Shown one piece after another: positions 4,304 through 31,910 of a stretch of 64,000 nucleotides of DNA; positions within the stretch are counted from its first letter, which is position 1, and each line of letters begins with the position of its first letter. Position numbers and translations under genes: made by a program. The DNA lies in the IMG/VR virus record IMGVR_UViG_3300047095_000752, positions 181,226-245,225 of that record; one strand, given 5' to 3'. A model generated the notes under the pieces. It had not been told where the DNA came from, did no database searches, and saw only the letters and a program-made list of their open reading frames with translations.

Positions 4304-4681
4304 TTAGGTGAAAGAGTAACTAAACTTTATAAGGTTTTTATCAAATTCTTCAGATCTATACAAATAAGCGAAGTTATCTAATTCATTCTTAAACTTATCA
4401 AATCCCATATCATCCAATATATAATCGAGTCTAGTACATATATCATACATATTTTGATTATATTTAACATTACCATCCCTTGGTTTATCTCTTGGTGATA
4501 GACCTCTCGGACCTAAAGTCATACGATAGGTTTGATCTTTAAATACATTTATAATATGACCGAGATTATCATCCTTTGTAATTTGGGAGGTTACCGAAAC
4601 CATTTCGATAGAATAATACCACGTGTATTCTAATTGGGTATATCCTAAATCATGTAAATTTTTTGGTTGAGCGCCTTGCAT
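4304..4681 (-). CDS. hypothetical protein
   Basis: 125-aa ORF overlapping the upstream gene. Confidence 0.55.
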   Translation of the reverse strand: MQGAQPKNLHDLGYTQLEYTWYYSIEMVSVTSQITKDDNLGHIINVFKDQTYRMTLGPRGLSPRDKPRDGNVKYNQNMYDICTRLDYILDDMGFDKFKNELDNFAYLYRSEEFDKNLIKFSYSFT

Positions 4682-5336
4682 TATTCAAGTCCTTTAGTTG
4701 TATATATCGACATACTGTTAGATTCCTGTTGAGAGCATAGGGTACAGTTAAACTACCCCTAGACTGCATAGCAACTAAATCTAAATTAATCATACCAGCA
4801 TTTCGAGTTGACGGCTTTTCATTTATAGCATATATACCTTGAAATTTAGATGTCAACTCACTCTTAGTTATAGCTAATGCTTGTTTATAAGACTGAGAGT
4901 TTATATCAACTCTAAAGTGATATCCAGTAGAACTAATTGTAACATAGCACTTATATCTATTATATAATTGAAATAGATCCGTTACACATTTCTTTAAATC
5001 TTTTTCTGTAATCTTATTAGATCTACTGTCTATGTCAATTATTTTTTGTCGGAGAGTCTGACCGGGATATTCACTTTCGACAGATATGGAAACTGTGTAG
5101 CCAGTTATAATATCTTCATAGTTATCTTTATTTAATATTATAGCCGAATCTTTATATTTACGAACTACGGTGAAGGAATCGTGTGTATCGTATTTATTAA
5201 ACAGTAAAACTTTTCTGTAATTACACTCCTTAAGTATTTTGTCTTTGTTTGAAATGTAATACTCGTACAACTCACCTGTAGTCGTACGAGTATTACCAAC
5301 TGTTATTGTCTTGTCTGGTTCCGATGGTTGCGGCAT
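4650..5336 (-). CDS. stand-alone AEP primase-polymerase resembling the LigD Pol domain
   Basis: LYEYY..N-terminal helix, IIDID (DxD), SSTGYH (cf. SGxKGxH), INLD..QSRGSLTVPYAL (cf. IFxD..N.RG.T.VAPYSL). Confidence 0.7.
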   Translation of the reverse strand: MPQPSEPDKTITVGNTRTTTGELYEYYISNKDKILKECNYRKVLLFNKYDTHDSFTVVRKYKDSAIILNKDNYEDIITGYTVSISVESEYPGQTLRQKIIDIDSRSNKITEKDLKKCVTDLFQLYNRYKCYVTISSTGYHFRVDINSQSYKQALAITKSELTSKFQGIYAINEKPSTRNAGMINLDLVAMQSRGSLTVPYALNRNLTVCRYIQLKDLNNARRSTKKFT

Positions 5337-5344
5337 AATATCTC

Positions 5345-5764
5345 CTAGCCTCTATAACGATGATAATGCATTTCTATATATTTACCGTTTTTCAATTCTC
5401 GTCTTGTTGATTGATGTAGAACACGAAGAGTATTCCCATTCAAGTTAGACTTTGTATGTAGTTTATGGTTTATTTTATTTTTAAACCCTATATTATACAT
5501 AAGTTTTTTAGACATGAATCTATTTTTAGTTTCTAAAAATCTTTTAATAACATAGGGGCTTATGGAATACATCCACTGGTCGGACATTGGTAGATACTCA
5601 CATGCACACCAATTATAAAGATTATCGTAAAAATATGACTTTAAACTTTTATTACATTTTATATATTGTAACATATTTAGACGTGGTCGATATAAGATTA
5701 AATTTGTAAGCAGAGAGTAATTTATCATAGATTTTACTAAATACATTCTGGTTAAGTCGGACAT
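5345..5764 (-). CDS. hypothetical basic, aromatic-rich protein
   Basis: 139-aa ORF, coupled in operon. Confidence 0.5.
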   Translation of the reverse strand: MSDLTRMYLVKSMINYSLLTNLILYRPRLNMLQYIKCNKSLKSYFYDNLYNWCACEYLPMSDQWMYSISPYVIKRFLETKNRFMSKKLMYNIGFKNKINHKLHTKSNLNGNTLRVLHQSTRRELKNGKYIEMHYHRYRG

Positions 5765-5766
5765 AT

Positions 5767-5970
5767 CTAAGGTTCAACCATCAAGAATTTTTTGAAATAT
5801 TTATTACCTCGATATAAGTCGAACCAATGCCCATTAACAAAGCCAAATATAGAAATGTATAGTAAATTAGTATAAAATGCGAATGTATTATATGTATCGT
5901 ATTCAAATATGAAAATTCTAAATATACGCCTAATGCCGGACCAACAACGTGTAATTTTATCTATAATCAT
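5767..5970 (-). CDS. small orphan protein, tandem paralogue of 5957..6187
   Basis: shares GI(I)RRIFxxFI...GFxNxxWxxLY...YFKKF; ATG at 5970. Confidence 0.6.
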   Translation of the reverse strand: MIIDKITRCWSGIRRIFRIFIFEYDTYNTFAFYTNLLYISIFGFVNGHWFDLYRGNKYFKKFLMVEP

Positions 5971-6187
5971 GACATTTAACCCAATCGTCTGAAAAGAATT
6001 TTTTGAAATACACAGTACTATCGTATAACTCTTTCCATTGGTCATTAATGAAACCATACAATGTGATGAAGGTCATATTTGCATATACTGTAAATGTATA
6101 AAATGAATTACGAATCTGGTTTCCTATAAAACATGTAAATATGCGTCTAATTATACCCATACATATTCGGATGTTCGTTTCAATCAT
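5957..6187 (-). CDS. small orphan protein, tandem paralogue of 5767..5970
   Basis: same shared motifs. Confidence 0.6.
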   Translation of the reverse strand: MIETNIRICMGIIRRIFTCFIGNQIRNSFYTFTVYANMTFITLYGFINDQWKELYDSTVYFKKFFSDDWVKCHDYR

Positions 6188-7044
6188 ACATTGAACCTAT
6201 CTATAACTTTTTGCATTTCAGATAATATGGATTCTGCTTTGGTGTTGCGAGGTACCATTTTATCTAAAGATCCATAGTGGGCTTCAAGGCAATTCAATAG
6301 AAGTTCCTTAATTGGTTCATACTGTATGTCGTGAGGGAGAGAAGTAGTTTCATATAGTGTCTGGAGTGTCTTTTCTTTTTCATAAAAATGATTTTCAACT
6401 TGATCTAAGTTCCACTCTCCCGCGCGTATTGACTTCCACCGTTCTCGATCCCGTTGCATGTCCATATCACCAAATTGTAATAATTGTTCAGCATAATCTA
6501 TTAGTCGAACGATGTGATATGCGAATTTAGTATCAAATCCGTATTTATCTATTAATTCTTTTCTTTTACCGGAATTTGGATCTTTATTTTTCAATTTTCG
6601 TAATTGAGAATACGCATAGCCTTTGTAAGTGTGCCAGAGCTTAGAACATAAGAACTTATGTCTATTATTACGAACCATCTCACCGATCTTGGTCATATGG
6701 CATATACAATTATCAGGAACAAATAAACTGTCGATCATATTTGGATTATTATTTACACATAAATCAAAATACTTTACAATATTAAATATAGAAAAATCTA
6801 CGTCGTCATAACACTTCTGAAACTGATCGAATCCTTGTGGTCTTCGTCCGAATCCTTCTATATGCCCTCCAATTTGATGAGGAAACAGGATCAATTTTGG
6901 GGGCATACAGAAGCCATACACATCTTTATCGGAATCTCGGTTATGGACTCCGTATGCGAAACTGCCCATGATCACCTCATATTGGACGCTATCGATCATC
7001 CACTTTGGACAATCCTTCTGGACTTGTTTGTGTTGTTTGAACAT
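6184..7044 (-). CDS. Pol-beta superfamily nucleotidyltransferase (RlaP/YcgL-like)
   Basis: GSFAYG...DSDKD motif, NNPNMIDSLF, GYAYSQL, KFAYHIVRL. Confidence 0.85.
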   Translation of the reverse strand: MFKQHKQVQKDCPKWMIDSVQYEVIMGSFAYGVHNRDSDKDVYGFCMPPKLILFPHQIGGHIEGFGRRPQGFDQFQKCYDDVDFSIFNIVKYFDLCVNNNPNMIDSLFVPDNCICHMTKIGEMVRNNRHKFLCSKLWHTYKGYAYSQLRKLKNKDPNSGKRKELIDKYGFDTKFAYHIVRLIDYAEQLLQFGDMDMQRDRERWKSIRAGEWNLDQVENHFYEKEKTLQTLYETTSLPHDIQYEPIKELLLNCLEAHYGSLDKMVPRNTKAESILSEMQKVIDRFNV

Positions 7045-7056
7045 CTAGTTTTTCTC

Positions 7057-7587
7057 CTATAAAACATGTTTCCATAATTTATAATTAATAATTCTTGATA
7101 TTGCGGTTAGAGATACATTAAATATTTTTGCTAATTCTTTTTGTTCAAAATATTTATTTTTATGGGATATTCTAATTATACTAACTATCTTATTATTTAA
7201 TTTAGATTTTCCAATTTTTTCACCTTTAGCAGTTAAGTTATTTTGCGCGGCGTGTTTCATATTTTGGGAATGAGTACACCATTCCAGATTATCTAATCTA
7301 TTATTTAACTTATTTCCATCAATATGATTGATAATAGCACCTTCAAAATATTTCTCAGGTCGAAAACTCAACAGTACTAATCTATGAATTGTACAAATTT
7401 TTTTATTTTTATTTTTAGATAATGTGACGTGTAAATATCTCTTACCATTTGGTTTTAATATCTTTTCAGGATCGTTAAATTTAGATCCACCGGCACCTAT
7501 AATAAAACTTTTAACTCTACCAAAATTACTAACTTGATACATACCCTCATATTCAGGTATATCTTTCCAAATTTCTTGTATATCCAT
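7057..7587 (-). CDS. NUMOD4-HNH homing endonuclease
   Basis: EIWKDIPEYEGMYQVSNFGRVKS (NUMOD4); HRLV...INHIDGNKLNNRLDNLEW (HNH); C-terminal HTH. Confidence 0.92.
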   Translation of the reverse strand: MDIQEIWKDIPEYEGMYQVSNFGRVKSFIIGAGGSKFNDPEKILKPNGKRYLHVTLSKNKNKKICTIHRLVLLSFRPEKYFEGAIINHIDGNKLNNRLDNLEWCTHSQNMKHAAQNNLTAKGEKIGKSKLNNKIVSIIRISHKNKYFEQKELAKIFNVSLTAISRIINYKLWKHVL

Positions 7588-7783
7588 ATTGTTGGTCCTT
7601 TAATTTAATGATTACTCTGCTGCCATTTAACATGATCATAAAATTGTTTTGAGAGTTCCGTGCAGTTAGGATTGTCTCTCGGTATAGATGTGAATAGGGT
7701 TAGAGAACCCACACTATAATAAAGAATAATATTATTTTCAGTGTTATATTCCAATACTTGTTTTAAGCTTTCTTCAAGTGGCA

Positions 7784-8419
7784 TCACATTACCTCTTTAG
7801 GAGTATAAGGAATAAATTCTGCATTCATAGACTTATATATTGGAGAACCGATGTTCTTATATCGTGTGAATATAAATTTTTGCTTTAAATAACAATCTTT
7901 ATGTTCAACTGTTAAATCCCCATCGACCGTTAACTGCCCGAGTATCTTACACTTTATATCAACTCCATTAACAAGATATGGATTAAAATATTCACCGCTA
8001 AATTTAGAACTTCCTTTATGATTTTGGAATAAATATACTTCAAGTTCTTTATCTGTGGTGTGTTTCAAATTGAGTTTCAATTTATATTCAATCATATCGT
8101 ATGGAATTTGATTAACGTCTAACCAATTCCAAAACATATCAATGCGTTTAATATTATTTTCACAATATTTAGAATGTAAGTTTAAATAATTTAAGTCTTC
8201 AATCTTAACATCCACATCCCACTTTTCTTGCATCTCCTTACGAAGAAGAGTTAGGAACCATTCTGATTTACTATATTGCCAATGGGACTCACCATACTCG
8301 CCGTCCATGTTATAAAAAAATGTATTAAATAATATCCCCAGTGGAGAATCGAAATTATTATCAAAATTATAAAATTTTTCCATCTTATATGGGATCATAA
8401 CTTTTACCATAGGACTCAC
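7784..8419 (-). CDS. hypothetical protein
   Basis: 211-aa ORF in coupled operon. Confidence 0.55.
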   Translation of the reverse strand: MSPMVKVMIPYKMEKFYNFDNNFDSPLGILFNTFFYNMDGEYGESHWQYSKSEWFLTLLRKEMQEKWDVDVKIEDLNYLNLHSKYCENNIKRIDMFWNWLDVNQIPYDMIEYKLKLNLKHTTDKELEVYLFQNHKGSSKFSGEYFNPYLVNGVDIKCKILGQLTVDGDLTVEHKDCYLKQKFIFTRYKNIGSPIYKSMNAEFIPYTPKEVM

Positions 8420-8601
8420 TTCAATACCGTAGTTGTTATTTTCAATACAGGCTCACTGAATACAATAAATTCATTATTACATGCTTTACATGTGCTTTTA
8501 AATTCATCCGCTATCATTTTAATGTTATCATTTAATTTATGGTCGGTAGTACAAAATGGACATACAACCATATCAATTGCAACTTCACTAACTCTAGACA
8601 T
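8416..8601 (-). CDS. small Zn-ribbon protein
   Basis: CPFC...CKAC. Confidence 0.6.
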   Translation of the reverse strand: MSRVSEVAIDMVVCPFCTTDHKLNDNIKMIADEFKSTCKACNNEFIVFSEPVLKITTTVLK

Positions 8602-8611
8602 TTCAGACCCT

Positions 8612-8917
8612 TTACTTTCCGGTGAAAAAATTCATTCCAAATTGAAATTGTTTGTGGTATTTTAGCTTACCACATAGTAGTAAAACACAATCCAAGTTAT
8701 GACTAACAAACGCATATACTTGAAATGAGTTTACAGTTTGACCGCAAATACCAAATGGGCTAGTACCACCAACCTGAGTCCACGCATAAAAATCTACATG
8801 ATCATCGATATAAGCATGATTATTGATGTCAGGTTCTTGCTTCTTTAGTGTGTTTAGTATATCATATTTATATGCCGCAAAGAAGTCCCAATTAATGGGG
8901 TCGTGTGGGTTACTCAT
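8612..8917 (-). CDS. hypothetical protein
   Basis: 101-aa ORF with AAAGG RBS. Confidence 0.55.
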   Translation of the reverse strand: MSNPHDPINWDFFAAYKYDILNTLKKQEPDINNHAYIDDHVDFYAWTQVGGTSPFGICGQTVNSFQVYAFVSHNLDCVLLLCGKLKYHKQFQFGMNFFTGK

Positions 8918-9110: not shown

Positions 9111-9917
9111 ATGTCAATTTTCAAAAAAATTATACTTAGTTTAGGTGTTACATTATGTAGTTTAAATTCATATGCAATTACAGTTGATGGAAACTGGGAC
9201 GATTGGTTTTCATATTCAGGTAACATTGGTTTTAACACATGGCGTGAAAATCTAGTAACAGTTAACAACCCCAACATTCGTTTTCAAAACGATGAAGAAG
9301 GACCCACACCCGGTGGTGGTGGTCAGTTATATGATATAGAGCAAATCTTCTATGCATTTTCAGATAATGATCCCAACGCTATAAGTGGTGGTAAACTTTA
9401 TATTGGACTTGTAACGGGATTTCCACCACAAGGTGTTCCCGCAGATGCTCTATATGCTGGTGATCTTTTCATTGACATCGGTGCTACTGGTAGTTATACA
9501 TTTGCTATTAACTTAAGTGAACGACAAGCCGACGCTTCTCGCTTCAATCAAGGTTGGATCAATGTTAACTGGGATACAATAGACACAACATTTTATCCAG
9601 CAGCAAACCCATATCGAGTTGATGAAAATGGACCCGGTGTATTCAATTATACAACTTCATTAAACCCCGTTGTAGAAACCAATCTACACGGAAAGCATTA
9701 TTTTTATGAAATTTCAATCGACCTAGACAGCATCATGGAAGAACAGTTAACAAATCCAAATGGTGGTATCGGTCTACATTGGACTATGGAGTGTGGTAAC
9801 GACGTTATCGATGTCGTGGATAACACCCCTTTAAATCCAGTGCCCGAACCTAGTACAATCGCTCTGCTAACAATGGGTTGTATTGGGGCTGCATTTCGTC
9901 GTAAATTCAGCGCATAA
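9111..9917 (+). CDS. PEP-CTERM (exosortase-sorted) surface protein
   Basis: signal peptide MSIFKKIILSLGVTLCSLNSYA; C-terminal VPEPST + hydrophobic helix + RRK. Confidence 0.92.
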   Translation: MSIFKKIILSLGVTLCSLNSYAITVDGNWDDWFSYSGNIGFNTWRENLVTVNNPNIRFQNDEEGPTPGGGGQLYDIEQIFYAFSDNDPNAISGGKLYIGLVTGFPPQGVPADALYAGDLFIDIGATGSYTFAINLSERQADASRFNQGWINVNWDTIDTTFYPAANPYRVDENGPGVFNYTTSLNPVVETNLHGKHYFYEISIDLDSIMEEQLTNPNGGIGLHWTMECGNDVIDVVDNTPLNPVPEPSTIALLTMGCIGAAFRRKFSA

Positions 9918-22972: not shown

Positions 22973-24169
22973 ATGTCTAATAATCTTAAACCGATAATGT
23001 TCTGCACACAACCATGTATGGAGATATTCGATTATATAAATCCAAATACCATTGACACGATACATCTATATATAGATTTAAAAAATTCATCGACCAACTT
23101 ATTTATACCAGATGTAGTACAAGAAATAGTAGAGACAAGTCGCCGAATGGGTAAGTCAGTTGAAAGTTCTATTTTTCAATCTATTATATTGACTTGCTCG
23201 AACTGGATAAGTGCTGCTCGAAGCCGTGGGTTTAATTGTAAGATAATCATATGCAATGATAAAGGCAGGTCCGAATACCATACAAAACTAAATCCATTAT
23301 ATAAAAAGAATAGAAAAATCACAAATGTATTGATGGAACATTATAGTGAAGAAATGGATCAGATTAAGACCCGCAACTGGGATTTCGCTGAGAAGATATG
23401 TGCAAAATTAAATAATATACATTTTATTAATATTAATTTCTTAGAAAGTGATTTTTTACCTTATTATTTAATAACTCGATATTTCAACGAATCGCCAAAT
23501 GTATATCATATCGTATCATCATGTGATAAGGATCACTTTCAATTATTAAATAAACCCAATACAATAATGTTCTCACGCAAATCAGGCACTACAACCATAT
23601 TAGATAAACAATCGTATTTAAGTAAATTTTTAAAGATTAATAAAGCCAGCGTTAAATCACAATCCAAATGGATCGATATAATGTCTAAAGTAAATCCAGA
23701 ATATATTGTATTAATAATGGCTATGTGCGGGGACGTATCCGATAACGTATTTGGTATACCTAGAATTGGTGATAAAACTGCATTAAAAATGATATCAGAT
23801 CATGATGTTGTAAACGAACTAATTGGTACGGTGGATGAACTTGAAGATAGATTATATAATGGTGGAAAAGTAATTCTAGATAAGCCTGATTTATATGATA
23901 GTTTAGATAATAATTGGAAATTAGCTGTAGATAATAATGACTTACTCACCAAAGCATATAAACAAATAAGCTACGAATCGCTATCAAGATGGCTTGATAA
24001 AACTGACATGATTAATGTTAAAGTTCCTGCTCGTAAAGCGATTGATGATAATATTAATAAACCATTCTATGTTTATAACGAAACTCACAAAGAAAATTTT
24101 ATCAAAAAAATAAAAGAATTAATACACGACTTTCACTTGAACGATTCTGATATTTACAATTTATTTTAA
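22973..24169 (+). CDS. 5'-3' exonuclease / T4 RNase H-like (FEN family)
   Basis: YID, YKKNR, ESD, SCDKD, GDVSDNVFGIPRIGDKTA (H3TH). Confidence 0.85.
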   Translation: MSNNLKPIMFCTQPCMEIFDYINPNTIDTIHLYIDLKNSSTNLFIPDVVQEIVETSRRMGKSVESSIFQSIILTCSNWISAARSRGFNCKIIICNDKGRSEYHTKLNPLYKKNRKITNVLMEHYSEEMDQIKTRNWDFAEKICAKLNNIHFININFLESDFLPYYLITRYFNESPNVYHIVSSCDKDHFQLLNKPNTIMFSRKSGTTTILDKQSYLSKFLKINKASVKSQSKWIDIMSKVNPEYIVLIMAMCGDVSDNVFGIPRIGDKTALKMISDHDVVNELIGTVDELEDRLYNGGKVILDKPDLYDSLDNNWKLAVDNNDLLTKAYKQISYESLSRWLDKTDMINVKVPARKAIDDNINKPFYVYNETHKENFIKKIKELIHDFHLNDSDIYNLF

Positions 24170-24172
24170 TCT

Positions 24173-24218
24173 AAAAAACACGCTACCGGGATATCTGCCG
24201 GTAGCGTGTTCTTTTTTA
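24173..24218. terminator. bidirectional intrinsic terminator
   Basis: AACACGCTACCGG/CCGGTAGCGTGTT flanked by A- and T-runs. Confidence 0.8.
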
Positions 24219-24222
24219 GTTC

Positions 24223-24633
24223 TTATGCTTTCTTTCCTTTCTGGATTGCTTCGAGGACAATCCCGGTTGAAAGGACCGCGAACAATATCACGGTCTGCAC
24301 CATAGCCGCCCCAGCCACTGCAGTTAGGCAGTAGGGGGATTCGTTCAACTTGTAGGACATGGCGATGATCGCCAGTCCCGCTACGACGAGGGAAATAACC
24401 GCCCGGAGGCGGATGTGATTTTCCCACATGTAGCGCGTCCGCTCATGTGGCTCCGACCACCTCTGATTGATAATCAGTACCCAAAGCGCCGCTGTTGTTC
24501 CGGCGACACATGATACCACCGGGATGCTGATGTTGTTGAGTGGTGCGAAATACGCCGCCCCGTAGATTGCAGCCTCTCCAATGATAGCAGCGATTAGCAT
24601 AAAAGGCATTAAAGCCTTCCGATCTTCAAACAC
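24223..24633 (-). CDS. GC-rich multi-pass membrane protein
   Basis: about four hydrophobic helices; GAAGGAG RBS. Confidence 0.7.
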   Translation of the reverse strand: MFEDRKALMPFMLIAAIIGEAAIYGAAYFAPLNNISIPVVSCVAGTTAALWVLIINQRWSEPHERTRYMWENHIRLRAVISLVVAGLAIIAMSYKLNESPYCLTAVAGAAMVQTVILFAVLSTGIVLEAIQKGKKA

Positions 24634-24663
24634 GATTTTACTCTCCTTCCAAGAGGTATTATA

Positions 24664-24981
24664 CTATTTCCCGAACATCGCCCCCATCATCCGACCCGCC
24701 GTCGCCAATCCCATCACCGTATTTTTAATCTCCTCTATTTTGGGTCTAAGACCCGATGCCTTGAAGCGGAGCGCGTCAACAATGACGCCCACCACAATCA
24801 AGGTAACAACGCCACATATCAGATAGGTCGGGGCGGCGAGCGCCTTCATAGCACCCACCGCGAGGAAGCCCACCATGTAGGCTTCCTTGTTCCCCCCGGT
24901 CTGGATTCCTTTCCAGACCGGGGTAACGAATGCTCGGGTGAGGGACCCAATCCTTTTGAGTCCCTTTACGATGGGGTTCAT
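24664..24981 (-). CDS. GC-rich membrane protein
   Basis: ATG 24981 in ATGA overlap with the upstream gene; hydrophobic core. Confidence 0.65.
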   Translation of the reverse strand: MNPIVKGLKRIGSLTRAFVTPVWKGIQTGGNKEAYMVGFLAVGAMKALAAPTYLICGVVTLIVVGVIVDALRFKASGLRPKIEEIKNTVMGLATAGRMMGAMFGK

Positions 24982-25316
24982 GTGCAAGCCCCAACCCGTG
25001 CACCCACGGACTGGGCGAGGTACCATGCCGCGTAGACGGCGATGGCGGGGATGAACCACAAGAGGCTACACCCCGTCACCACGAGGTCTAGAATCTGACC
25101 GGCCTTGTGGTCTACGGTCCCCTTCCTCTCAATCGCGAGCATGATACCCATGCTCACGAAACTTCCCGTGATCGCCACAGCGGCAATCGTGGGGAAGATG
25201 GTGCCGACAGCACACCAACCAATAAGGCTGATGGCGTCGGCGGTGACTGGCGACCTCTCAAGGAAGTCAAGACACTTCCCGATGGTCACCTGAAGGTGAA
25301 GTTTGAGTTTACCCAT
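24978..25316 (-). CDS. GC-rich membrane protein
   Basis: AAAGGA RBS; hydrophobic helices. Confidence 0.65.
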   Translation of the reverse strand: MGKLKLHLQVTIGKCLDFLERSPVTADAISLIGWCAVGTIFPTIAAVAITGSFVSMGIMLAIERKGTVDHKAGQILDLVVTGCSLLWFIPAIAVYAAWYLAQSVGARVGACT

Positions 25317-25349
25317 AATATATCCTTTCTTGGAGATGTTTTTGTTCAG

Positions 25350-25796
25350 TTATACCGCCACACAACCGACGCGGGCGGGACGCTCACCCATAAAGCTATT
25401 ATTACGGATGGTGGATAAAATCTTCTCACCGATAATGTAAGTGGCGAGGGCGGTGATGACACGGAGTGTAAAACCGAGTAGCACACCCACCACCATAAGC
25501 TGCAACCCAACCAACCAGATGGTCAGTTTGCCTAGCACCGCATAACCGGCGAAGCGGGCAATACCCCCTTCGATGACGACCGTCAGTATCGTCTTCAACG
25601 AGGGCTTAGAGACGAGCTCAATCGCGGAGCATACAAGCACCACACCACCAATGGCGGTGAGAGCGACTGGGGCGGCGACGAGACCCATCGCCATCCCACC
25701 TACACCCACAACAACGGACGCCACAGGGGCGAACTTCACGCCGAAGTTGAGGGCGCGGACGATGATATTCTTGACATTGGATACGATGCTTTTCAT
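25350..25796 (-). CDS. GC-rich membrane protein
   Basis: first gene after class A promoter; very hydrophobic. Confidence 0.7.
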   Translation of the reverse strand: MKSIVSNVKNIIVRALNFGVKFAPVASVVVGVGGMAMGLVAAPVALTAIGGVVLVCSAIELVSKPSLKTILTVVIEGGIARFAGYAVLGKLTIWLVGLQLMVVGVLLGFTLRVITALATYIIGEKILSTIRNNSFMGERPARVGCVAV

Positions 25797-25869
25797 GGTA
25801 TTACCCTTTGATGTTTAGACTATATGAAACCACCATTCAATCCGCATAGATCGATGATAGTATTCTTTA

Positions 25870-25889
25870 CACTTCTTAATATATATAAT
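25870..25889 (-). promoter_or_regulatory. phage promoter class A
   Basis: ATTATATATAT TAAGAAG TG, immediately after terminator hairpin 25901-25928. Confidence 0.7.
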
Positions 25890-25938
25890 GAAAAATCAAC
25901 AAAAAAAGACCCCATAAATATGAGGTCAAAATGTTAAA

Positions 25939-27337
25939 TTATTTAAATTTTAATGACAATTTACCATGTCTTACCATATATACATCAAGCACAGATATAC
26001 CATCACGTTTAATTTTTATAGGGTATCTAAGTCTTGTGAACCAATTGCGATCAGTATCACCCATAAAAACATAAGATATAAGAATTAATTCGGATTTAAA
26101 AGATCTTAGTAATTTTGATACTTTATTTAAACATACAAAAACATTGTCTTTGAAGATATAGCGAAACCAAGAGAAGATGTCGATCATTACGTTCTACCAA
26201 CGACTAAATTTGTGAAATAAGGGTTTATGGTATATTTAATCATACGAGATGGATAAAAATATCCACTGGATGGTTTAAAAATAATTAACTCACACCCATA
26301 GGAATTACTTAAACCATACTTAAAATCTATAAAAGGGGAGACCCCCGGTATACGAAAACTTTTGACTAACTTATATGTATAAAATATACAATCTAAAATA
26401 GTAATACCCTTAGCCATAATGCATCTCGTATGATTTCTTTAATTTGGTATATCGAACAATAGGAGGACCGGTATGTAGTCGATATAAAATACCAGTTAAA
26501 TTAAAGGAACGATTTGCATATTTGCTCACCCCATAAAGAGTCCACATCGACATAAATTTGTTTTGATCGAAACCATATCCGGTATTAATATCAGATCCAC
26601 TAAATATCCACTTTATAATTGAATCAATTTTTTTGAATATTTTCATAATTAAAATTTTTATAACGTCATTGTAAAATTTCACCAGTTAAACTCCATTTCA
26701 AACAGTCGCCTAAATATTTATCATCGTAGGACTTTATATGATAATAAAACGTGTCAGTAGAATATTTAGTACATACTATTTTTAAAGCATGTCTACATAA
26801 AATACTAATCATTGCGCGGTAATCAAATTTAATTATACTAAATATAAGATTGACAAACATATTAAAATATTTATAAGGTGCGCTGATAGGCGTCAGTAAA
26901 CGCAAGTGCTAAACTCCCTCTGGTTCGTATATAATCTACGACGGTATATACCATAAAAGCCAACTGCTTAGATTTAAGGATTTGTGTTTCAGTCCAAGAA
27001 TGTAATTTAACAATAGTATTAAATGAAAATGTTAATATATGTCTATATGTTTTTTTGGTAATATAATAAATATATTTGAAAATTAAATCTACACACTTAC
27101 GAAATAGGTTTTCTAAAGCCATCGGAGTTTACTCACCGGATTCAATATTAAAGCAAATTTTCCAATACCATACCTATAAGCCTGTGAATACTCACAATAA
27201 AAATATTCTATTATACCTATTGAAAATGATATTAGCCAGACATATTTGAACTTATATTGAACTAATGCGTGTAGAAGTTTGTAATATGGGTTTATAGTAG
27301 CTAGTATATAAAAGTTGGAGTATGATAATGTCTTCAT
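25939..27337 (-). CDS. array of six translationally coupled 74-90 aa orphan genes (25939-26187, 26187-26417, 26410-26682, 26666-26905, 26871-27122, 27113-27337)
   Basis: head-to-tail overlaps; similar size and Y/F/I/K-rich composition. Confidence 0.55.
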
Positions 27338-27366
27338 TGTTTCTCCCGTGGTTTACCCTTTTAGCT

Positions 27367-27379: not shown

Positions 27380-27411
27380 AAAGTATATTAGTTTAAAGGA
27401 GATATATTAAA

Positions 27412-28134: not shown

Positions 28135-28154
28135 TGGATCGGATCCAAACATGA

Positions 28155-28190
28155 AACAAAAAATAAAGCCTGTATATAAACAGGCTTAAA
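28155..28190 (-). terminator. intrinsic terminator
   Basis: AAGCCTGT/ACAGGCTT followed by T-run on the minus strand. Confidence 0.7.
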
Positions 28191-28239
28191 ATTTATGGGT
28201 GTTAATTTACCTCACTTTAAGTTAAAGTTGAACTATATA

Positions 28240-28259
28240 CAATATTTAATATATATAAT
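28240..28259 (-). promoter_or_regulatory. phage promoter class A (no downstream ORF)
   Basis: ATTATATATAT TAAATAT TG. Confidence 0.65.
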
Positions 28260-28702
28260 TAAGTGGTAGTTTCACCATCGAAGTGTTCATCATCAGCCTT
28301 AGCTATTTCTTTAGTTTTATGAATTGTTCCGTCTTTGTGGTTTGGAGGGGAGTAAATACTGTATAATTTAAGTTTAGTAGTTCCAGTATTTACAATGTTG
28401 TGCTTAACTCCAGCCGGGATAATAATTCCTGCGCCGGGATATATTTCATATTCTTTACCATCAATAACACTTACACCGGTACCTTCTTCGATTCTAAAAA
28501 ATTGATCTAAGGTATGGGTTTCGGAACCGATATCTTCATTTTCATTAAGGGACATAGCGACTAACTGACAATTGTTAGCTGTATATATAACTTTTCTAAA
28601 ATTGTCATTATCTTCAGTTAGTTTTTCAATATTATCTATAAACCCATTTTGACTTGATAATGTGTTTTCATTTAATTTCTTTTTTGTTATAACTTTATAC
28701 AT
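28259..28702 (-). CDS. cupin-2 domain protein with N-terminal extension
   Basis: NFRKVIYT..CQLVAMSL...DIGSETH..DQFFRIEEG...IPAGVKHNIVN...LKLYSIYSPPNH. Confidence 0.88.
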   Translation of the reverse strand: MYKVITKKKLNENTLSSQNGFIDNIEKLTEDNDNFRKVIYTANNCQLVAMSLNENEDIGSETHTLDQFFRIEEGTGVSVIDGKEYEIYPGAGIIIPAGVKHNIVNTGTTKLKLYSIYSPPNHKDGTIHKTKEIAKADDEHFDGETTT

Positions 28703-28717
28703 AACTTAATCCTTTCA

Positions 28718-29017
28718 ATGTTGGAGGTATTCATGCTAAAATTTGTCATAAATATATCTAAACTAATTATAACATTAATTGTATGTGGATTCACGTATAA
28801 TTTGTTAGTTGACAGTTATAATAGAGTTACTAAAAAAGAAAATGTTATATATAACATATCAGTGTATTACGATCTATCTCTGGCCGATTCAGACTCCTCG
28901 TACAAGATGCCAATCATAAAGGATAATTATATACAATACACAAATATAAACGGAGACACTTTAATATACAGTAACTTTAGATATAAGATTGAAGTTAAGG
29001 AATTGGACAGCAAATAA
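28718..29017 (+). CDS. small membrane-anchored protein
   Basis: N-terminal hydrophobic helix. Confidence 0.5.
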   Translation: MLEVFMLKFVINISKLIITLIVCGFTYNLLVDSYNRVTKKENVIYNISVYYDLSLADSDSSYKMPIIKDNYIQYTNINGDTLIYSNFRYKIEVKELDSK

Positions 29018-29028
29018 GAATAGAATTG

Positions 29029-29036
29029 GGACAAAT
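29029..29036 (+). promoter_or_regulatory. phage promoter class B
   Basis: GGACAAAT upstream of 29073. Confidence 0.55.
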
Positions 29037-29072
29037 TTAAGTAAATTTAACTTTTAATGAAGGATTTTATAA

Positions 29073-29945
29073 ATGAGATTACACAACGCTAAAGATAATA
29101 TAGATGCGGTTCTATCTGAGTCACTACTCGGCACTGTGGGTGGAGCCGCCCTGAAATATGGTGGAAAAGCCCTCGCCGGTATGACTAAGGCAAATGCTGC
29201 TAAAGCCGCCAAACTTGGTGTGGGTGGTACTGCCGCATACACTGCCGGAAATGCAGTTGATAATAGAACTGGTGATAATGTAGGTAAAGCATGGCGCGGT
29301 GTAAAAAACGCTGCGTCTAATGTTAAAGCCGCAGGTTGGGATAACCCTCTTGATGCTGCAGGTAAGTGGTGGGCAAGTAACCCACAAGCTGATGCTGCTC
29401 GGGATGCTCATATCAAATCACTAACCAAATCAAGTGCTGAAAAAGTTGCCGCCCGCGAAGCCGCAGAGAAAGCAGCCCAAGCACAACGAGACGCTCAAGC
29501 CAAGAATGTACTTGCAAATTCAGGTACAAAGCCTACTCTTGCAACATCCCTTAAAGATGGTATGACTTCTGCCAAAAATTCAATTATGACTAATAGTAAA
29601 GCTGCTCTCGAAAAGGTGAAAAGGGTGGCAACCAACAAGACTGCAGAAGTTAAGAAGGGAATTGATAGCTATCAAGCAGGTCGCGCCAAAGCTGCCGAAC
29701 TAATGGCTAAGTTACCGAAGCCCGCACCAATCCGGCCCGTAGCCCCGGCTCAACCCGTACTACCACCCCCTCCACCTCCGATGCCACAAGCCGCCTATAT
29801 TCCACCTCCTAGACCAGTTCAAGCTCCCGTACAAGCACCTCAACCTGTACCCCAAGCTCCTCAACAAACACGGGTACAACGTGCACAGAATTTCTACGGT
29901 GTAGGTCGAAATCGCCAAGGTAGTGGTGGTGGTCCCAGAAGATAA
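29073..29945 (+). CDS. Ala/Lys-rich, Pro/Gln-tailed protein; candidate internal head (ejected) protein
   Basis: class B promoter, N-terminal VLSE putative cleavage site, low-complexity composition. Confidence 0.55.
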   Translation: MRLHNAKDNIDAVLSESLLGTVGGAALKYGGKALAGMTKANAAKAAKLGVGGTAAYTAGNAVDNRTGDNVGKAWRGVKNAASNVKAAGWDNPLDAAGKWWASNPQADAARDAHIKSLTKSSAEKVAAREAAEKAAQAQRDAQAKNVLANSGTKPTLATSLKDGMTSAKNSIMTNSKAALEKVKRVATNKTAEVKKGIDSYQAGRAKAAELMAKLPKPAPIRPVAPAQPVLPPPPPPMPQAAYIPPPRPVQAPVQAPQPVPQAPQQTRVQRAQNFYGVGRNRQGSGGGPRR

Positions 29946-30038
29946 TTATCTTATTAAAATATATATAATACACAATCCCATTTCAATTAATATTGGAATG
30001 GGATTCTTTTTATGATATCATATGGGTAGGAGAACACT

Positions 30039-30557
30039 ATGAATAGTAAAAATAAAGGATCATCGTTCGAGCGCAAGATTTGTAAGTTATTATCACAGTG
30101 GATTACAAGCGGTGAACGTGACGATATTTTGTGGCGCTCCATTTCATCTGGAGCTTGGAATACTATTAAAAAACGCACTACAAATACACAAATTGGGGAT
30201 CTTACCTATATAGATCCATTAGGGAAACCTTTTATTGATAAGTTTGCAATCGAATGTAAATCGTATAAAGATGTACAAATGATTAAATTGTTTAACGAAA
30301 ATAGTATTATAAATAAATGGTGGGATAAAATTAATGAAGAAGCCGGAGATAAATATCCAATTATAATATTCAAAGAAAATAGAAGTTGTGAGTTTGTGGT
30401 TATTCCGTATTCTATATTTGACGTATTGAATTCTGACATTGGATTTTCAAATACAAATTATATTAAAGTGGGTAGGGAAACTAATACATTTTATATAATT
30501 AAACTGTCGGATTTATTACAAAATGATTACAATAAATTTATAAATGACATAAGATAA
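30039..30557 (+). CDS. Holliday junction resolvase (Hjc-like PD-(D/E)XK)
   Basis: SKNKGSSFER...SSGA...GDL...IECK. Confidence 0.85.
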   Translation: MNSKNKGSSFERKICKLLSQWITSGERDDILWRSISSGAWNTIKKRTTNTQIGDLTYIDPLGKPFIDKFAIECKSYKDVQMIKLFNENSIINKWWDKINEEAGDKYPIIIFKENRSCEFVVIPYSIFDVLNSDIGFSNTNYIKVGRETNTFYIIKLSDLLQNDYNKFINDIR

Positions 30558-30569
30558 AGGATGATAACA

Positions 30570-30719
30570 ATGCGTAAATTTAATGAAGATTTTTCATCAC
30601 CCATGAGTTCAGTTAGTATGCCTTCATATGAGACATTTACTAAACCTTATCGCTTAGATAAAGCAAAAAAATTTATTAAAAAAATTGCTGCTAAAAAAAT
30701 AAACTCTACTAAAAAATAA
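30570..30719 (+). CDS. 49-aa basic protein (MRKFNEDF...KKINSTKK)
   Basis: AAAGGA RBS, followed by terminator. Confidence 0.5.
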   Translation: MRKFNEDFSSPMSSVSMPSYETFTKPYRLDKAKKFIKKIAAKKINSTKK

Positions 30720-30760
30720 CCCCCCAGTAGCGTCGTGTCAGCGCGGACTGGGGGATTTAA
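30711..30760. terminator. bidirectional terminator
   Basis: CCCCCAGT/ACTGGGGG stem with A/T flanks. Confidence 0.65.
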
Positions 30761-30954
30761 AATTTTATTCGGGTGGAGTTTAGGGACCAGCCCTTATAGC
30801 TATGTTCATTTTAATTACCCAATCATGGTGAAGCCCTAGCTGTGGTTGGCGCGGGCGTGGGAAACTTGTTCAACCACCTCGTCGACGGTGGCGTTCGGAT
30901 AGCGGACTACGACTTGCCAGATCGCTCTAACAAGTGTAGTCCGCTCAACTGGAC

Positions 30955-31239
30955 TTAGCGGGCGCACGCGGGGCACCCACCGAGCCTCGCCCGCAGCCGG
31001 GCGAACCGGCTGGGGGGCGGAAGCACAGGGGCTTTCTTCAGCCCCAGCTTCAGAGCGGCTGCCCCGACAATCGCCGGGTTCCTCAACACCATGGCACCGC
31101 CAATGGCGGCCACCATGATTACGCCCGCGACCGCGTAATCCCGCTTCGTAAGCGGGGTGTCGGTCGTCTTGGTTGTGGTCGTCTCTTCGGTAGTGGTGAT
31201 CTTTTCGTGGGTCTCTGCGTTATTGGTGTCTTGTTCCAT
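30955..31239 (-). CDS. GC-rich small membrane protein
   Basis: GGAAGG RBS; Thr-rich N-terminus, one TM helix, basic Cys tail. Confidence 0.65.
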   Translation of the reverse strand: MEQDTNNAETHEKITTTEETTTTKTTDTPLTKRDYAVAGVIMVAAIGGAMVLRNPAIVGAAALKLGLKKAPVLPPPSRFARLRARLGGCPACAR

Positions 31240-31295
31240 GACATACCTTCCATTATGCCACCTATTCTTAGAATTAGGGGCGTTAGTTGTAAATT

Positions 31296-31315
31296 CAATA
31301 GTTTATATATATAGT
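31296..31315 (-). promoter_or_regulatory. phage promoter class A
   Basis: ACTATATATAT AAACTAT TG. Confidence 0.7.
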
Positions 31316-31401
31316 CGTTTTTAGCCTATTTTGAAGGTAAAATATAAGCTGTTTTCTTACACAATTTTAGGGTATAATACCGCACATAATCATATTTTTT
31401 A

Positions 31402-31414
31402 GGACAAATGAGTG
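31402..31414 (+). promoter_or_regulatory. phage promoter class B
   Basis: GGACAAATGAGTG upstream of the LigD-PE/GT operon. Confidence 0.55.
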
Positions 31415-31484
31415 TAAAGAGGTTAAAATAAACAAGAAGATTTTATAAAATGGTTTAATTTAAAAATATTAAAGGAGAATAACT

Positions 31485-31910
31485 TTGTATTCGACTGAAC
31501 GATTTGTGATCCATGAACACGACGCTAAAACAGCAGGTTTACACTATGACCTGCGGATCTCTATCCCAAACCGAGATTCCCTAGCGAGTTTTGCGATCCC
31601 TAAGCATAAGATCCCACAAAAAGCAGGGGATAAGGTTTTGGCTGTAAAGACGCACGACCATGGTAGAATCTGGCTGTCCATAGATAATATGACGATCCCA
31701 GAAGGTCAGTACGGAGCAGGATCTATAAATATTTTTCAGGCAGGTGTATGTGAGATAGAAGGTTGGTCGTATAGTCACATAACATTTAGAGTAAATGGAT
31801 CCTCAGTAAAAGAAGGTCTGGATGGAAGATATGCTTTAATTAAGTTTAGAGGTGGTAAATCTGGAGACAGAGATAACCTATGGGTATTATTAAAAACTAA
31901 AACACAATAA
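31485..31910 (+). CDS. stand-alone LigD 3'-phosphoesterase (PE) domain protein
   Basis: RFVIHEHDA...LHYDLR...SFAIPK...LAVKTHDH...IPEGQYGAG. Confidence 0.9.
   Translation: MYSTERFVIHEHDAKTAGLHYDLRISIPNRDSLASFAIPKHKIPQKAGDKVLAVKTHDHGRIWLSIDNMTIPEGQYGAGSINIFQAGVCEIEGWSYSHITFRVNGSSVKEGLDGRYALIKFRGGKSGDRDNLWVLLKTKTQ

What the first reader, a model, noticed from the sequence alone, without database searches (positions are those of the whole stretch)
4650..31910. Split NHEJ-type end-repair enzymes: separate LigD Pol-like and LigD PE genes
Seen: an AEP Pol-like gene (4650-5336) and a clear 3'-phosphoesterase gene (31485-31910) lie 26 kb apart; no Ku or ligase is in the window. Established: Pol, PE and ligase domains form LigD and occur as stand-alone proteins in some prokaryotes. 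Inference: the phage heals nuclease-generated breaks (R-M, CRISPR or its own HNHs) with a modular repair set.
Basis: partly seen in the sequence, partly recalled or inferred. Interest (0 to 1): 0.6.

Follow-up and report, generated by a model that had tools for sequence, protein, structure and literature searches.

The report
Ku-less LigD polymerase and phosphoesterase genes
A large lake-water phage carries two separate genes descended from the bacterial break-repair enzyme LigD, a compact polymerase and a 3'-end-trimming phosphoesterase, but neither Ku nor the LigD ligase, so it probably repairs damaged nucleic-acid ends in a Ku-independent way that nobody has tested.

Summary
Both genes are real. 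The gene at 31485-31910 (+) is a stand-alone LigD-type 3'-phosphoesterase (PE). It passes Pfam LigD_N (2.8e-17) and keeps five of six catalytic residues; the sixth, Tyr88, is Trp.

A 108-sequence family profile hits NHEJ (non-homologous end joining) polymerases in the PDB (2.3e-8). An AlphaFold model (pLDDT 94.8) superposes on LigD polymerase domains at Z 22-23, against 13.7 for replicative primases. The DxD, His and Asp motifs are kept in at least 103 of 108 members.

The two genes co-occur 27 kb apart in the same gene order in a relative with about 80% identical proteins. In other viral contigs they are adjacent or fused.

The "NHEJ" reading is only partly supported. The 245-kb record has no Ku and no ATP-dependent DNA ligase, and Ku is absent from all 47 PE-bearing viral records searched. 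The record does hold LigA and two RNA-type ligases.

The most likely role is Ku-independent healing and extension of 3' ends on phage DNA gaps or breaks (about 0.45). RNA 3'-end repair is a serious rival (about 0.25). I rate this a new variant of a known kind, of moderate interest.

The parts
4650..5336 (-). Compact stand-alone LigD-Pol-type AEP polymerase (228 aa). Motif I is D101-x-D103, motif II is SSTGYH with H140, and motif III is D186. The N-terminal PSEPDK...YEYY stretch resembles the LigD Pol 'NxDK...YY' element.
   Evidence: There is no Pfam, PHROG or NCBIfam hit. Family alignments are A1 and A2. D101, D103 and D186 are kept in 107/108 members and H140 in 103/108. The profile hits NHEJ polymerases in the PDB. 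The AF2 model has pLDDT 94.8 and gives Z 22-23 to LigD Pol domains.
31485..31910 (+). Stand-alone LigD-type 3'-phosphoesterase (141 aa). H12, H20 and D22 are the metal ligands; R24 and H59 are phosphate contacts. W63 sits where Tyr88 of the Pseudomonas enzyme lies. The gene follows a 245-nt non-coding stretch and heads a rightward gene row.
   Evidence: Pfam LigD_N 2.8e-17. PDB hits 3p4h and 3p43. TIGR02777 scores 74.5 bits, below its cut-off of 144. Residue counts come from A3.
6184..7044 (-). RlaP-family Pol-beta nucleotidyltransferase (286 aa), 850 bp upstream of the AEP gene on the same strand. It may be a functional neighbour; this is not proven.
   Evidence: Pfam RlaP 3.5e-15 and phrog_388 7.4e-46. 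It is adjacent to the AEP in the 80%-identity relative and lies 1.6 kb from it in a 36%-identity lineage. It is absent near the AEP in a 60%-identity relative and far away in G016 and G020.
4304..4681 (-). Unknown 125-aa ORF whose start overlaps the AEP stop by 32 nt. It is probably co-transcribed and may be translationally coupled.
   Evidence: ORF list. The same overlap with a 131-aa ORF is seen in the 80%-identity relative. No family or Atlas hit.

Best explanation
The phage carries a split, Ku-independent remnant of the LigD toolkit. One part is a compact AEP polymerase of the NHEJ-polymerase clade. The other is a 3'-phosphoesterase.

The most likely job is repair of 3' ends at gaps, nicks or breaks in phage DNA:
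1. The phosphoesterase removes a blocking 3'-phosphate, or trims ribonucleotides.
2. The polymerase fills the short gap or extends the 3' end, probably with ribonucleotides, as LigD Pol and Prim-PolC do.
3. The nick is sealed by a ligase encoded elsewhere in the genome. That could be the NAD-dependent LigA, or one of the RNA-type ligases that accept a 3'-ribonucleotide.

Shown: the identity of both enzymes, their intact catalytic residues, their co-occurrence and fusion in other viruses, and the absence of Ku and LigD-type ligase.

Inferred: the substrate (DNA rather than RNA), the order of steps, the preference for ribonucleotides, and which ligase seals.
For: - Fold and profile place the 228-aa protein with the LigD Pol, Methanocella NHEJ Pol and Prim-PolC group, well above replicative primases.
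- The catalytic D, D, H and D are near-invariant in 108 family members.
- PE keeps its five core catalytic residues in all 22 sequences of the phage-type clade.
- A relative with 80% (AEP) and 75% (PE) identity has both genes 27 kb apart in the same gene order.
- Of 47 PE-bearing IMG/VR records, 9 also have this AEP. In 6 of those 9 the two are fused or adjacent (G003, G004, G012, G019, G020, G022), and in G010/G011 they lie about 10 kb apart.
- Among distant family members and viral records with fused forms, 13 join the AEP to an ATP-dependent ligase, often with PE as well, which is LigD-like.
- The record holds LigA and RNA-type ligases that could seal.
- A separate RNA-repair island has its own likely end-healing protein with an HD + kinase layout, so PE is not obviously needed there.
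Against: - No Ku was found here or in any of the 47 viral records, so this is not classical NHEJ.
- There is no ATP-dependent DNA ligase in the record.
- The 5'-phosphate pocket of LigD Pol (Asn13, Lys16, Lys26) is only partly kept. K9 is invariant in the close clade but found in only 27/108 family members, and the Lys26 position is Thr here.
- Tyr88 of PE, reported as essential in Pseudomonas LigD, is Trp here.
- The genes lie 26 kb apart on opposite strands, so nothing shows that they are co-regulated.
- The AEP neighbours RlaP, an RNA 3'-end enzyme.
- The record is only about 78% complete.
- No expression data exist: no RNA run holds the region.
Confidence: 0.45

Rival explanations
1. RNA 3'-end repair. 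The PE removes the 3'-phosphate left by host ribonucleases on tRNA or other RNA. The AEP refills missing templated ribonucleotides, for example in a tRNA acceptor stem. RlaP-type enzymes then add the untemplated ones. In this reading the pair belongs to the phage's RNA-repair arsenal, not to DNA repair.
For: - The AEP lies 850 bp from RlaP. RlaP adds 1-2 NMPs to damaged RNA 3' ends (preprint).
- The same proximity is seen in the 80%-identity relative. In a 36%-identity lineage a DHH phosphoesterase and a CCA-adding enzyme are nearby as well.
- Three distant family members fuse the AEP to a CCA-adding/polyA-polymerase + HD module, and two of those also carry 2H and PE. One member is fused to a cREC cyclic-phosphate-processing domain.
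- LigD Pol prefers ribonucleotides (abstract of PMC7072297). From general knowledge, the PE diesterase acts on ribonucleotide-terminated ends.
- Neither Ku nor a LigD-type ligase is present, and 3'-end restoration needs neither.
Against: - The dedicated RNA-repair island (HD + kinase protein, Rnl, Hen1-MTase::Pnkp-ligase, Hen1_N and six tRNA genes) lies elsewhere in the record and appears self-sufficient.
- RlaP adjacency is not kept in a 60%-identity relative, nor in G016 and G020.
- T4's RlaP also sits among nucleotide-metabolism genes, so proximity may reflect only a shared genome region.
- Most fusions are to ATP-dependent ligases, as in LigD.
- The record holds no CCA-adding enzyme.
- No AEP is known to repair RNA.
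Confidence: 0.25
2. The AEP is the phage's replicative primase, with the PE perhaps trimming RNA primers. Phages with their own multisubunit RNA polymerases are reported to lack any recognised primase.
For: - No DnaG-type primase was found with Toprim_2, Toprim_4 or Zn_ribbon_DnaG in the 245-kb record, although a DnaB-like helicase is present.
- The phage has two RNAP beta-like genes, and its helicase is nearest to those of AR9, PBS1 and the Staphylococcus jumbo phages. The review PMC7824862 says that group 1 jumbo phages lack both DnaG-type primases and AEPs; placing this phage in that group is my inference.
- From general knowledge, LigD Pol domains can prime in vitro.
Against: - The structure is far closer to repair polymerases (Z 21-23) than to PriS primases (Z 13.7 or less).
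- There is no helicase fusion, zinc-binding domain or PriCT domain.
- The gene sits among nucleotide-metabolism genes, not beside the helicase.
- tblastn finds no homologue in 50,697 GenBank phage records, which include AR9 and PBS1, so it cannot be that group's general primase.
- Family members are fused to ligase and PE, not to helicases.
- The record is incomplete, and a divergent primase may have been missed.
Confidence: 0.1
3. The two genes are functionally unlinked accessory genes. Each is a separately acquired end-processing enzyme, or the PE degrades some other phosphoester such as a nucleotide-based immune signal. Their co-presence is a by-product of a large genome.
For: - They are 26 kb apart on opposite strands and in different gene rows.
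- 38 of 47 PE-bearing viral records lack this AEP, including 14 of the 17 that are at least 90% complete.
- In G016 the two genes lie about 60 kb apart.
- In G019 the Pol-PE pair sits in a giant protein with mCpol and GGDEF nucleotide cyclase domains.
Against: - AEP and PE are fused or adjacent in several unrelated viral lineages and in canonical LigD.
- The pair is conserved in the same gene order in the 80%-identity relative.
Confidence: 0.15

Closest known systems
LigD polymerase domain (M. tuberculosis 2iru, P. aeruginosa 2fao) and the stand-alone NHEJ polymerase of Methanocella paludicola (5dmu)
   Same: Same fold over essentially the whole protein: Z 22.4-22.9, rmsd 2.2-2.3 over 224-225 residues. 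The family profile gives significant similarity. AEP motifs I-III are the same. The N-terminal 'PDK...YY' element resembles the LigD Pol one. Like the Methanocella enzyme, it is a separate protein.
   Different: It is about 55-75 residues shorter (228 aa against 282-301 in the PDB chains). The catalytic core between motifs I and III is equal in length, so the loss lies mainly in the N-terminal half. The Pfam LigD_Prim-Pol model does not detect it even at E of 1 or less. Only one residue of the 5'-phosphate pocket (K9) is kept, and only in the close clade. The genome holds no Ku and no LigD-type ligase. It is encoded by a phage.
Mycobacterial Prim-PolC (6sa0, 5op0), which works with LigC in short-patch excision repair
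   Same: Z 20.9. It is a stand-alone NHEJ-clade AEP that works without Ku, filling short gaps (PMC5663958, listed). This is the best functional analogy for a Ku-less role.
   Different: Prim-PolC is about 330 aa and is paired with an ATP-dependent ligase, LigC. No such ligase is in this phage record.
Archaeal stand-alone LigD-type phosphoesterases (3p4h/3ta5/3ta7 and 3p43)
   Same: These are the best PDB sequence matches (2.4e-16 and 2.5e-13). They are of similar size and stand alone. The His-His-Asp metal site and the Arg and His phosphate contacts are the same.
   Different: The phage clade has two small insertions (KTAG and IPNRD) and Trp in place of the phosphate-contacting Tyr in 19 of 22 members.
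Mycobacteriophage-encoded Ku (Omega, Corndog), the known case of phage use of NHEJ parts (from my own knowledge; not checked here)
   Same: A phage carries only part of the bacterial Ku-LigD system.
   Different: The content is opposite. Those phages bring Ku and borrow the host's LigD. This phage brings Pol and PE and has no Ku.
Phage RNA-repair sets (T4 Pnkp + Rnl; RlaP; bacterial Pnkp/Hen1)
   Same: They share the logic of end healing followed by sealing. An RlaP gene lies next to the AEP, and a Pnkp/Hen1-type island lies elsewhere in the genome.
   Different: No AEP or LigD-type PE is part of any described RNA-repair set in the papers I could search.

Membership tests
AEP superfamily (archaeo-eukaryotic primase fold) | Catalytic motifs I (DxD), II (sGxGxH-type His) and III (hD) on the AEP/RRM-like core fold | tested here: met
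   D101 and D103 are kept in 107/108 members, H140 in 103/108 and D186 in 107/108. The model matches AEP structures only; the next unrelated folds score Z below 7.
NHEJ-polymerase (LigD Pol) clade of AEPs | Closer in sequence profile and structure to LigD Pol, NHEJ Pol and Prim-PolC than to PriS or PrimPol clades | tested here: met
   Profile against the PDB: 5dmu 2.3e-8, 2iru 1.5e-5, 2fao 7e-4; the only other hits are CAPP Prim-Pol chains (about 2e-5) and Prim-PolC. Z is 20.9-22.9, against 13.7 for the best PriS and 8.6 for human PrimPol.
NHEJ-polymerase (LigD Pol) clade of AEPs | Passes the curated Pfam model LigD_Prim-Pol (PF21686) | tested here: not met
   No hit for the protein at E of 1 or less, and none in the whole record. 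More distant family members that are fused to ligase and PE do pass.
NHEJ-polymerase (LigD Pol) clade of AEPs | 5'-phosphate-binding pocket (Asn13, Lys16, Lys26 of M. tuberculosis; PMC8656161) | tested here: inconclusive
   By the N-terminal register 'PDK', K9 aligns with Lys16. It is invariant in the 11 close homologues but is Lys in only 27/108 family members. The Asn13 position is Glu and the Lys26 position is Thr. The mapping is by sequence only; I could not inspect model coordinates.
NHEJ-polymerase (LigD Pol) clade of AEPs | Surface loops 1 and 2 that mediate break synapsis | not tested
   The protein is about 55-75 residues shorter than the LigD Pol chains. Because the core between motifs I and III is equal in length, the N-terminal half must be shortened. 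No residue-level structural alignment was available to say which loop is lost.
Bacterial/archaeal NHEJ system (Ku + LigD or split Lig/Pol/PE) | Ku present in the same genome | tested here: not met
   No Ku (PF02735) in the 245-kb record, and none in 47 PE-bearing viral records. The control genome B. subtilis was detected. The record is about 78% complete.
Bacterial/archaeal NHEJ system (Ku + LigD or split Lig/Pol/PE) | ATP-dependent DNA ligase of the LigD/LigC type | tested here: not met
   No PF01068 match in the record. Only NAD-dependent LigA, an OB + RNA_ligase protein and a Pnkp-type ligase domain are present.
LigD 3'-phosphoesterase (PE) family | Passes the curated Pfam model LigD_N (PF13298) | tested here: met
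   63.2 bits against a cut-off of 31.1, covering profile positions 1-106 of 107.
LigD 3'-phosphoesterase (PE) family | Metal ligands His42, His48 and Asp50, and phosphate contacts Arg52 and His84 (Pseudomonas numbering) | tested here: met
   H12, H20, D22, R24 and H59 are present and 100% conserved in the 22 phage-clade sequences.
LigD 3'-phosphoesterase (PE) family | Tyr88 phosphate contact, reported as essential | tested here: not met
   The aligned residue is Trp63. In the phage clade it is W 19, F 2, H 1 of 22. In the distant homologues it is Y 6 of 8. An aromatic residue is kept but the hydroxyl is lost, with unknown effect on activity.
LigD 3'-phosphoesterase (PE) family | NCBIfam equivalog-domain cut-off (TIGR02777) | tested here: not met
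   74.5 bits against a cut-off of 144. It is a divergent member.
Enzymatic activities of LigD Pol and PE | Templated rNTP/dNTP addition; 3'-phosphatase and 3'-ribonucleoside resection | not testable with these tools
   This needs biochemistry.

The most novel reading that the evidence does not exclude
The compact LigD-Pol-like AEP and the PE form a ligase-free module that restores RNA 3' ends. The PE unblocks the 3'-phosphate end of a cleaved tRNA. The AEP refills templated ribonucleotides of the acceptor stem. RlaP or CCA-type enzymes finish the end. This would be the first RNA-repair role for an archaeo-eukaryotic primase and for a LigD-type phosphoesterase. It would also explain why viral versions never come with Ku and are sometimes fused to CCA-adding, 2H and cREC domains.
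Probability: 0.2. Interest if true: 0.75.

Novelty: new variant of a known kind. Interest (0 to 1): 0.55.

Why it matters
LigD Pol and PE have been studied as parts of Ku-dependent bacterial break repair. This finding adds three things.

1. There is a sizeable family of compact (about 230 aa) NHEJ-clade polymerases that carries no annotation. It has at least 158 clusters at 50% identity, and the contigs I examined are phage-like metagenomic ones. The standard Pfam, PHROG and NCBIfam models do not detect this member.
2. Viruses repeatedly combine this polymerase with the PE. The two can be separate genes, adjacent genes, two-domain fusions, or parts of giant multi-domain proteins. Ku was never present in the records searched.
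3. A Ku-independent use of the LigD end-processing chemistry therefore probably exists in phages, on DNA or on RNA.

If this holds up, it gives a testable case of how large phages mend their nucleic acids under host attack. It would also supply small new enzymes of possible use as tools, namely a minimal ribo-patch polymerase and a 3'-end phosphoesterase.

Tried and rejected
Searches that found nothing:
- Direct family scans of the 228-aa protein (Pfam, PHROGs, NCBIfam) and phmmer against PDB sequences gave nothing meaningful. The 11-sequence profile against the PDB also gave nothing.
- tblastn of both proteins against 50,697 GenBank phage records gave no match. blastn of the region gave only HNH-gene matches.
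- Searches of the record for DnaG-type primase domains and for a CCA-adding enzyme found nothing.
- The Atlas search of the 125-aa overlapping ORF gave no usable hit.
- The literature searches found no description of phage stand-alone LigD-Pol-type AEP plus PE. The library is incomplete, so prior description elsewhere is possible.

Attempts that failed or fell short:
- The first AF2 model, built on the shallow alignment, was poor (pLDDT 59.5), although it already pointed to LigD Pol. It was replaced by the deep-alignment model.
- The search for related loci failed on A2 and A4 because no stretch was conserved enough. With A1, ThyX, P0050 and P0008 it found no IMG/VR relatives. I therefore could not build a set of AEP-bearing viral records, or a control set, and have no enrichment statistic from the AEP side.
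- The Burroughs and Aravind 2016 RNA-repair paper is not held.

Ideas considered and rejected:
- The 296-aa ORF after the helicase as a primase. It is an extremely acidic protein with no hits.
- G016 as a close relative. Its AEP is only 31% identical, so it counts as an independent lineage.

Not run:
- Read laying was not used because no RNA run holds the region.

Full report
**What is there**

The window is the last 64 kb of a 245,225-bp IMG/VR virus record, estimated 78% complete, with 35% G+C.

The ORF at 4650-5336 lies on the minus strand (228 aa). The ORF at 31485-31910 lies on the plus strand (141 aa). They are 26.1 kb apart, in differently oriented gene rows.

**The phosphoesterase**

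- The 141-aa protein passes Pfam LigD_N (2.8e-17, 63.2 bits against a cut-off of 31.1).
- Its best matches among solved structures are the archaeal stand-alone PE proteins 3p4h (2.4e-16) and 3p43 (2.5e-13).
- It falls below the NCBIfam equivalog cut-off (74.5 against 144 bits), so it is a divergent member.
- In an alignment of 30 homologues, the residues matching the Pseudomonas metal ligands His42, His48 and Asp50 are H12, H20 and D22. Those matching the phosphate contacts Arg52 and His84 are R24 and H59. All five are fully conserved in the 22 sequences of the phage-type clade (residue roles from PMC8656161).
- The sixth catalytic residue, Tyr88, is Trp63 here. It is Trp in 19 of 22 clade members, whereas more distant homologues keep Tyr.
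- The clade also has two short insertions.
- I take the enzyme to be active but possibly altered in how it handles the phosphate. This is an inference.

**The polymerase**

- Pfam, PHROGs, NCBIfam and a phmmer search of PDB sequences give no meaningful hit for the 228-aa protein. The Pfam LigD_Prim-Pol model finds nothing in the whole record even at E of 1 or less.
- The word-index search found 10 homologues at 55-95% identity. They share invariant IDID, SSxGYH and INLDL...RGSLTVPY motifs.
- Family scans had left the protein open, so I ran the exhaustive profile search. It found 158 clusters at E of 1e-3 or better. Of the 149 newly returned ones, 100 are stand-alone proteins of 205-255 aa.
- In a 108-sequence alignment the only near-invariant positions include D101, D103, H140 and D186, which are AEP motifs I, II and III.
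- The profile of that alignment hits the Methanocella NHEJ polymerase 5dmu (2.3e-8), the M. tuberculosis LigD Pol domain (1.5e-5), CAPP Prim-Pol (2.2e-5) and P. aeruginosa LigD Pol (7e-4). The catalytic motifs align in register.
- With the deep alignment, AlphaFold2 gives pLDDT 94.8 and pTM 0.90.
- Foldseek ranks LigD Pol domains first (2fao TM 0.82, E 1e-9).
- The independent VIA-align scan of 48,161 chains gives Z 22.9 (2iru), 22.6 (2fao), 22.4 (5dmu) and 20.9 (Prim-PolC 6sa0) over 224-225 of 228 residues at rmsd 2.2-2.3. The next hits are PriS primases at Z 13.7 or less, and PrimPol-type enzymes at about 10 or less.
- It is about 55-75 residues shorter than the LigD Pol chains. The region from motif I to motif III has the same length, so the shortening lies mainly in the N-terminal half.
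- Of the 5'-phosphate pocket (Asn13, Lys16, Lys26), only the Lys16 equivalent (K9) is kept. It is kept only in the close clade, being Lys in 27 of 108 family members.

**Do the two genes go together?**

- A Logan contig of 137.7 kb encodes an 80%-identical AEP and a 75%-identical PE 27 kb apart. The neighbours are the same as here: RlaP, then a small ORF, then the AEP, then ThyX; and PDDEXK, then PE, then two 388-390-aa genes, then PhoH.
- In IMG/VR, 64 viral contigs encode a PE relative. Of the 47 whose records could be searched, 9 also encode an AEP of this family.
- In most of those 9 the two are physically linked:
  - G022 has a 451-aa AEP-PE fusion.
  - G020 has the AEP gene about 500 bp upstream of a PE-containing gene.
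  - G019 has a protein of at least 1830 aa containing ligase, mCpol, GGDEF, LigD Pol and PE domains.
  - G003, G004 and G012 have open frames of 1363-3476 aa containing ligase and AEP, close to the PE match.
- G016 has a 31%-identical stand-alone AEP about 60 kb from its PE, and no ATP-dependent ligase. This is an independent lineage with the same split layout.
- Distant family members from the exhaustive search carry LigD-like fusions: Pol-Lig-PE-KTSC, PE-Pol-Lig, Lig-Pol-PE and AEP-Lig, and Lig-AEP-PE and AEP-Lig.
- This fusion evidence links the two activities.
- On the other side, 38 of the 47 PE-bearing records lack the AEP, including 14 of the 17 that are at least 90% complete. PE often travels alone.
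- I could not assemble the reverse set of AEP-bearing records, so there is no enrichment statistic.

**What is missing, and what else the genome has**

Missing:
- Ku is absent from the record and from all 47 PE-bearing viral records.
- ATP-dependent DNA ligase is absent from this record, though present in 19 of the 47.

Present outside the window, at the start of the record:
- A complete NAD-dependent LigA.
- An RNA ligase with an N-terminal OB domain.
- A 734-aa protein that joins a Hen1-type methyltransferase to a Pnkp-type ligase domain (PDB 3jwh and 3ty8).
- A separate Hen1_N protein.
- A 410-aa protein with weak HD and P-loop kinase matches in the order seen in HD-Pnk end-healing enzymes. 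The comparison with HD-Pnk is from my own knowledge.
- An RNase T-like exonuclease.
- Six tRNA genes.

Present in the window:
- An RlaP nucleotidyltransferase beside the AEP.
- A FEN-type exonuclease and a PDDEXK nuclease.
- A UvsX-type recombinase.
- A DnaB-like helicase, a T4-type portal and a prohead protease.

What kind of phage this is:
- Two RNAP beta-like genes, and a helicase closest to those of AR9, PBS1 and the Staphylococcus jumbo phages, place it near the RNAP-encoding jumbo phages.
- Near-identical DNA recurs in many lake-water metagenomes. No RNA run holds it.

**Mechanism**

The shown facts fit a two-enzyme unit that processes 3' ends. It descends from LigD and works without Ku and without the LigD ligase.

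I favour a DNA role (0.45). In this reading the PE unblocks 3'-phosphate or ribonucleotide-terminated ends. The AEP fills short gaps or extends ends, as Prim-PolC does in Ku-independent short-patch repair (PMC5663958). LigA or one of the RNA-type ligases then seals. The reasons are these:
- Most fusions are ligase-Pol-PE, as in LigD.
- The structural family is a DNA-repair one.
- The RNA-repair island looks self-contained.

The RNA-repair rival (0.25) is not weak:
- RlaP acts on damaged RNA 3' ends (preprint) and lies 850 bp from the AEP here.
- RlaP is also adjacent to the AEP in the 80%-identity relative, and within 1.6 kb in a 36%-identity lineage that also has DHH and CCA-adding genes nearby.
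- Three distant members fuse the AEP to a CCA-adding/polyA-polymerase + HD module. Two of them also carry 2H and PE, and two carry topoisomerase IB. One member is fused to cREC.

Against the RNA rival:
- RlaP proximity is lost in a 60%-identity relative and in G016 and G020.
- T4's RlaP also sits among nucleotide-metabolism genes.

The primase rival (0.1) survives only because no DnaG-type primase was found. Structure, domain content, gene position and the absence of homologues in cultured relatives all argue against it.

This is not supported as stated:
- There is no Ku anywhere.
- Such breaks mostly carry 3'-OH ends (general knowledge).
- The phage has recombination genes available for double-strand breaks.

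**Novelty**

I found no description of phage-encoded stand-alone NHEJ-clade AEPs paired with PE in the searchable literature. The papers searched include the jumbo-phage and polyvalent-protein surveys and the survey of AEP families on mobile elements. The library is incomplete. Both enzyme kinds are well known, and stand-alone forms are known in archaea. I therefore class this as a new variant of a known kind: a compact, unannotated, virus-associated subfamily in a Ku-less setting. Interest is moderate (0.55).

Noticed in passing
Outside the window: G000:C1:1869-9654 (locus L075), plus tRNA genes at C1:13572-16862: An RNA-repair and ligase island on the minus strand. It holds a 410-aa protein with weak HD + AAA_33 kinase matches (HD-Pnk-like order); an RNA ligase with an N-terminal OB domain; a 734-aa fusion of a Hen1-type 2'-O-methyltransferase to a Pnkp-type ligase domain, with no kinase or phosphatase part; a separate 212-aa Hen1_N protein; a full NAD-dependent LigA; an RNase T-like exonuclease; and six tRNA genes. 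This is a rearranged Pnkp/Hen1 system in a phage.
   Followed up: partly
window 31945-33111 and 33117-34286 (+): Two tandem paralogues (43% identical, E 6e-102) lie directly after the PE gene and are conserved in the 80%-identity relative. The Atlas feature search points to viral GT9 (heptosyltransferase-like) glycosyltransferases. There is no Pfam or PHROG hit.
   Followed up: partly
window 35400-37751 (+): A PIN + PhoH protein of 783 aa is interrupted by a LAGLIDADG homing-endonuclease region, which looks like an intein. The relative's gene is 409 aa without the insert.
   Followed up: no
window 42757-43833 (+): A strong match to Volactin, an actin-family protein (3.7e-52), in a phage with its own RNA polymerases. 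It is also present in the relative. It may be a cytoskeletal element.
   Followed up: no
window 44783-47101 (+) and 9111-9917 (+): A GH9 cellulase with a CelD_N domain (772 aa) and a PEP-CTERM-tailed protein (268 aa). Both are unusual cargo for a phage.
   Followed up: no
window 53135-54025 (+): An extremely acidic 296-aa protein with long Asp/Glu runs lies directly after the DnaB-like helicase. It has no hits. It sits where a primase might be expected but is clearly not one.
   Followed up: partly
whole record G000: No DnaG-type primase domain was found (Toprim_2, Toprim_4, Zn_ribbon_DnaG), although a DnaB-like helicase is present. Two RNAP beta-like genes lie at C1:51491-52723 and C1:78061-79203. 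The helicase is closest to those of AR9, PBS1 and the Staphylococcus jumbo phages.
   Followed up: partly
L029:177-5669 (IMG/VR record G019) and L032:32-8521 (G022): G019 has a giant protein (at least 1830 aa) that combines a ligase C-terminal domain, mCpol, GGDEF, LigD Pol, a weak sigma-70 region 2 match and PE. In G022 a 451-aa AEP-PE fusion sits between a fused InPase-RNAP beta/beta' gene and a beta' C-terminal gene.
   Followed up: partly
Proteins P0155, P0170, P0186 and P0161 (metagenomic; not in the window): Giant proteins join topoisomerase IB, a CCA-adding/polyA polymerase, HD, LigD Pol, a 2H phosphoesterase and PE. One joins a ligase, LigD Pol and a cREC cyclic-phosphate-processing domain.
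   Followed up: partly
window 7057-7587 (-), 1361-2962 (-): An HNH_3 + NUMOD4 homing endonuclease lies next to RlaP. A 533-aa DUF7487 protein with three repeats of the domain lies further along.
   Followed up: no
window 24001-26000: A local G+C peak (48.9%, against about 30-38% around it) covers several short, overlapping minus-strand ORFs. I did not examine it.
   Followed up: no
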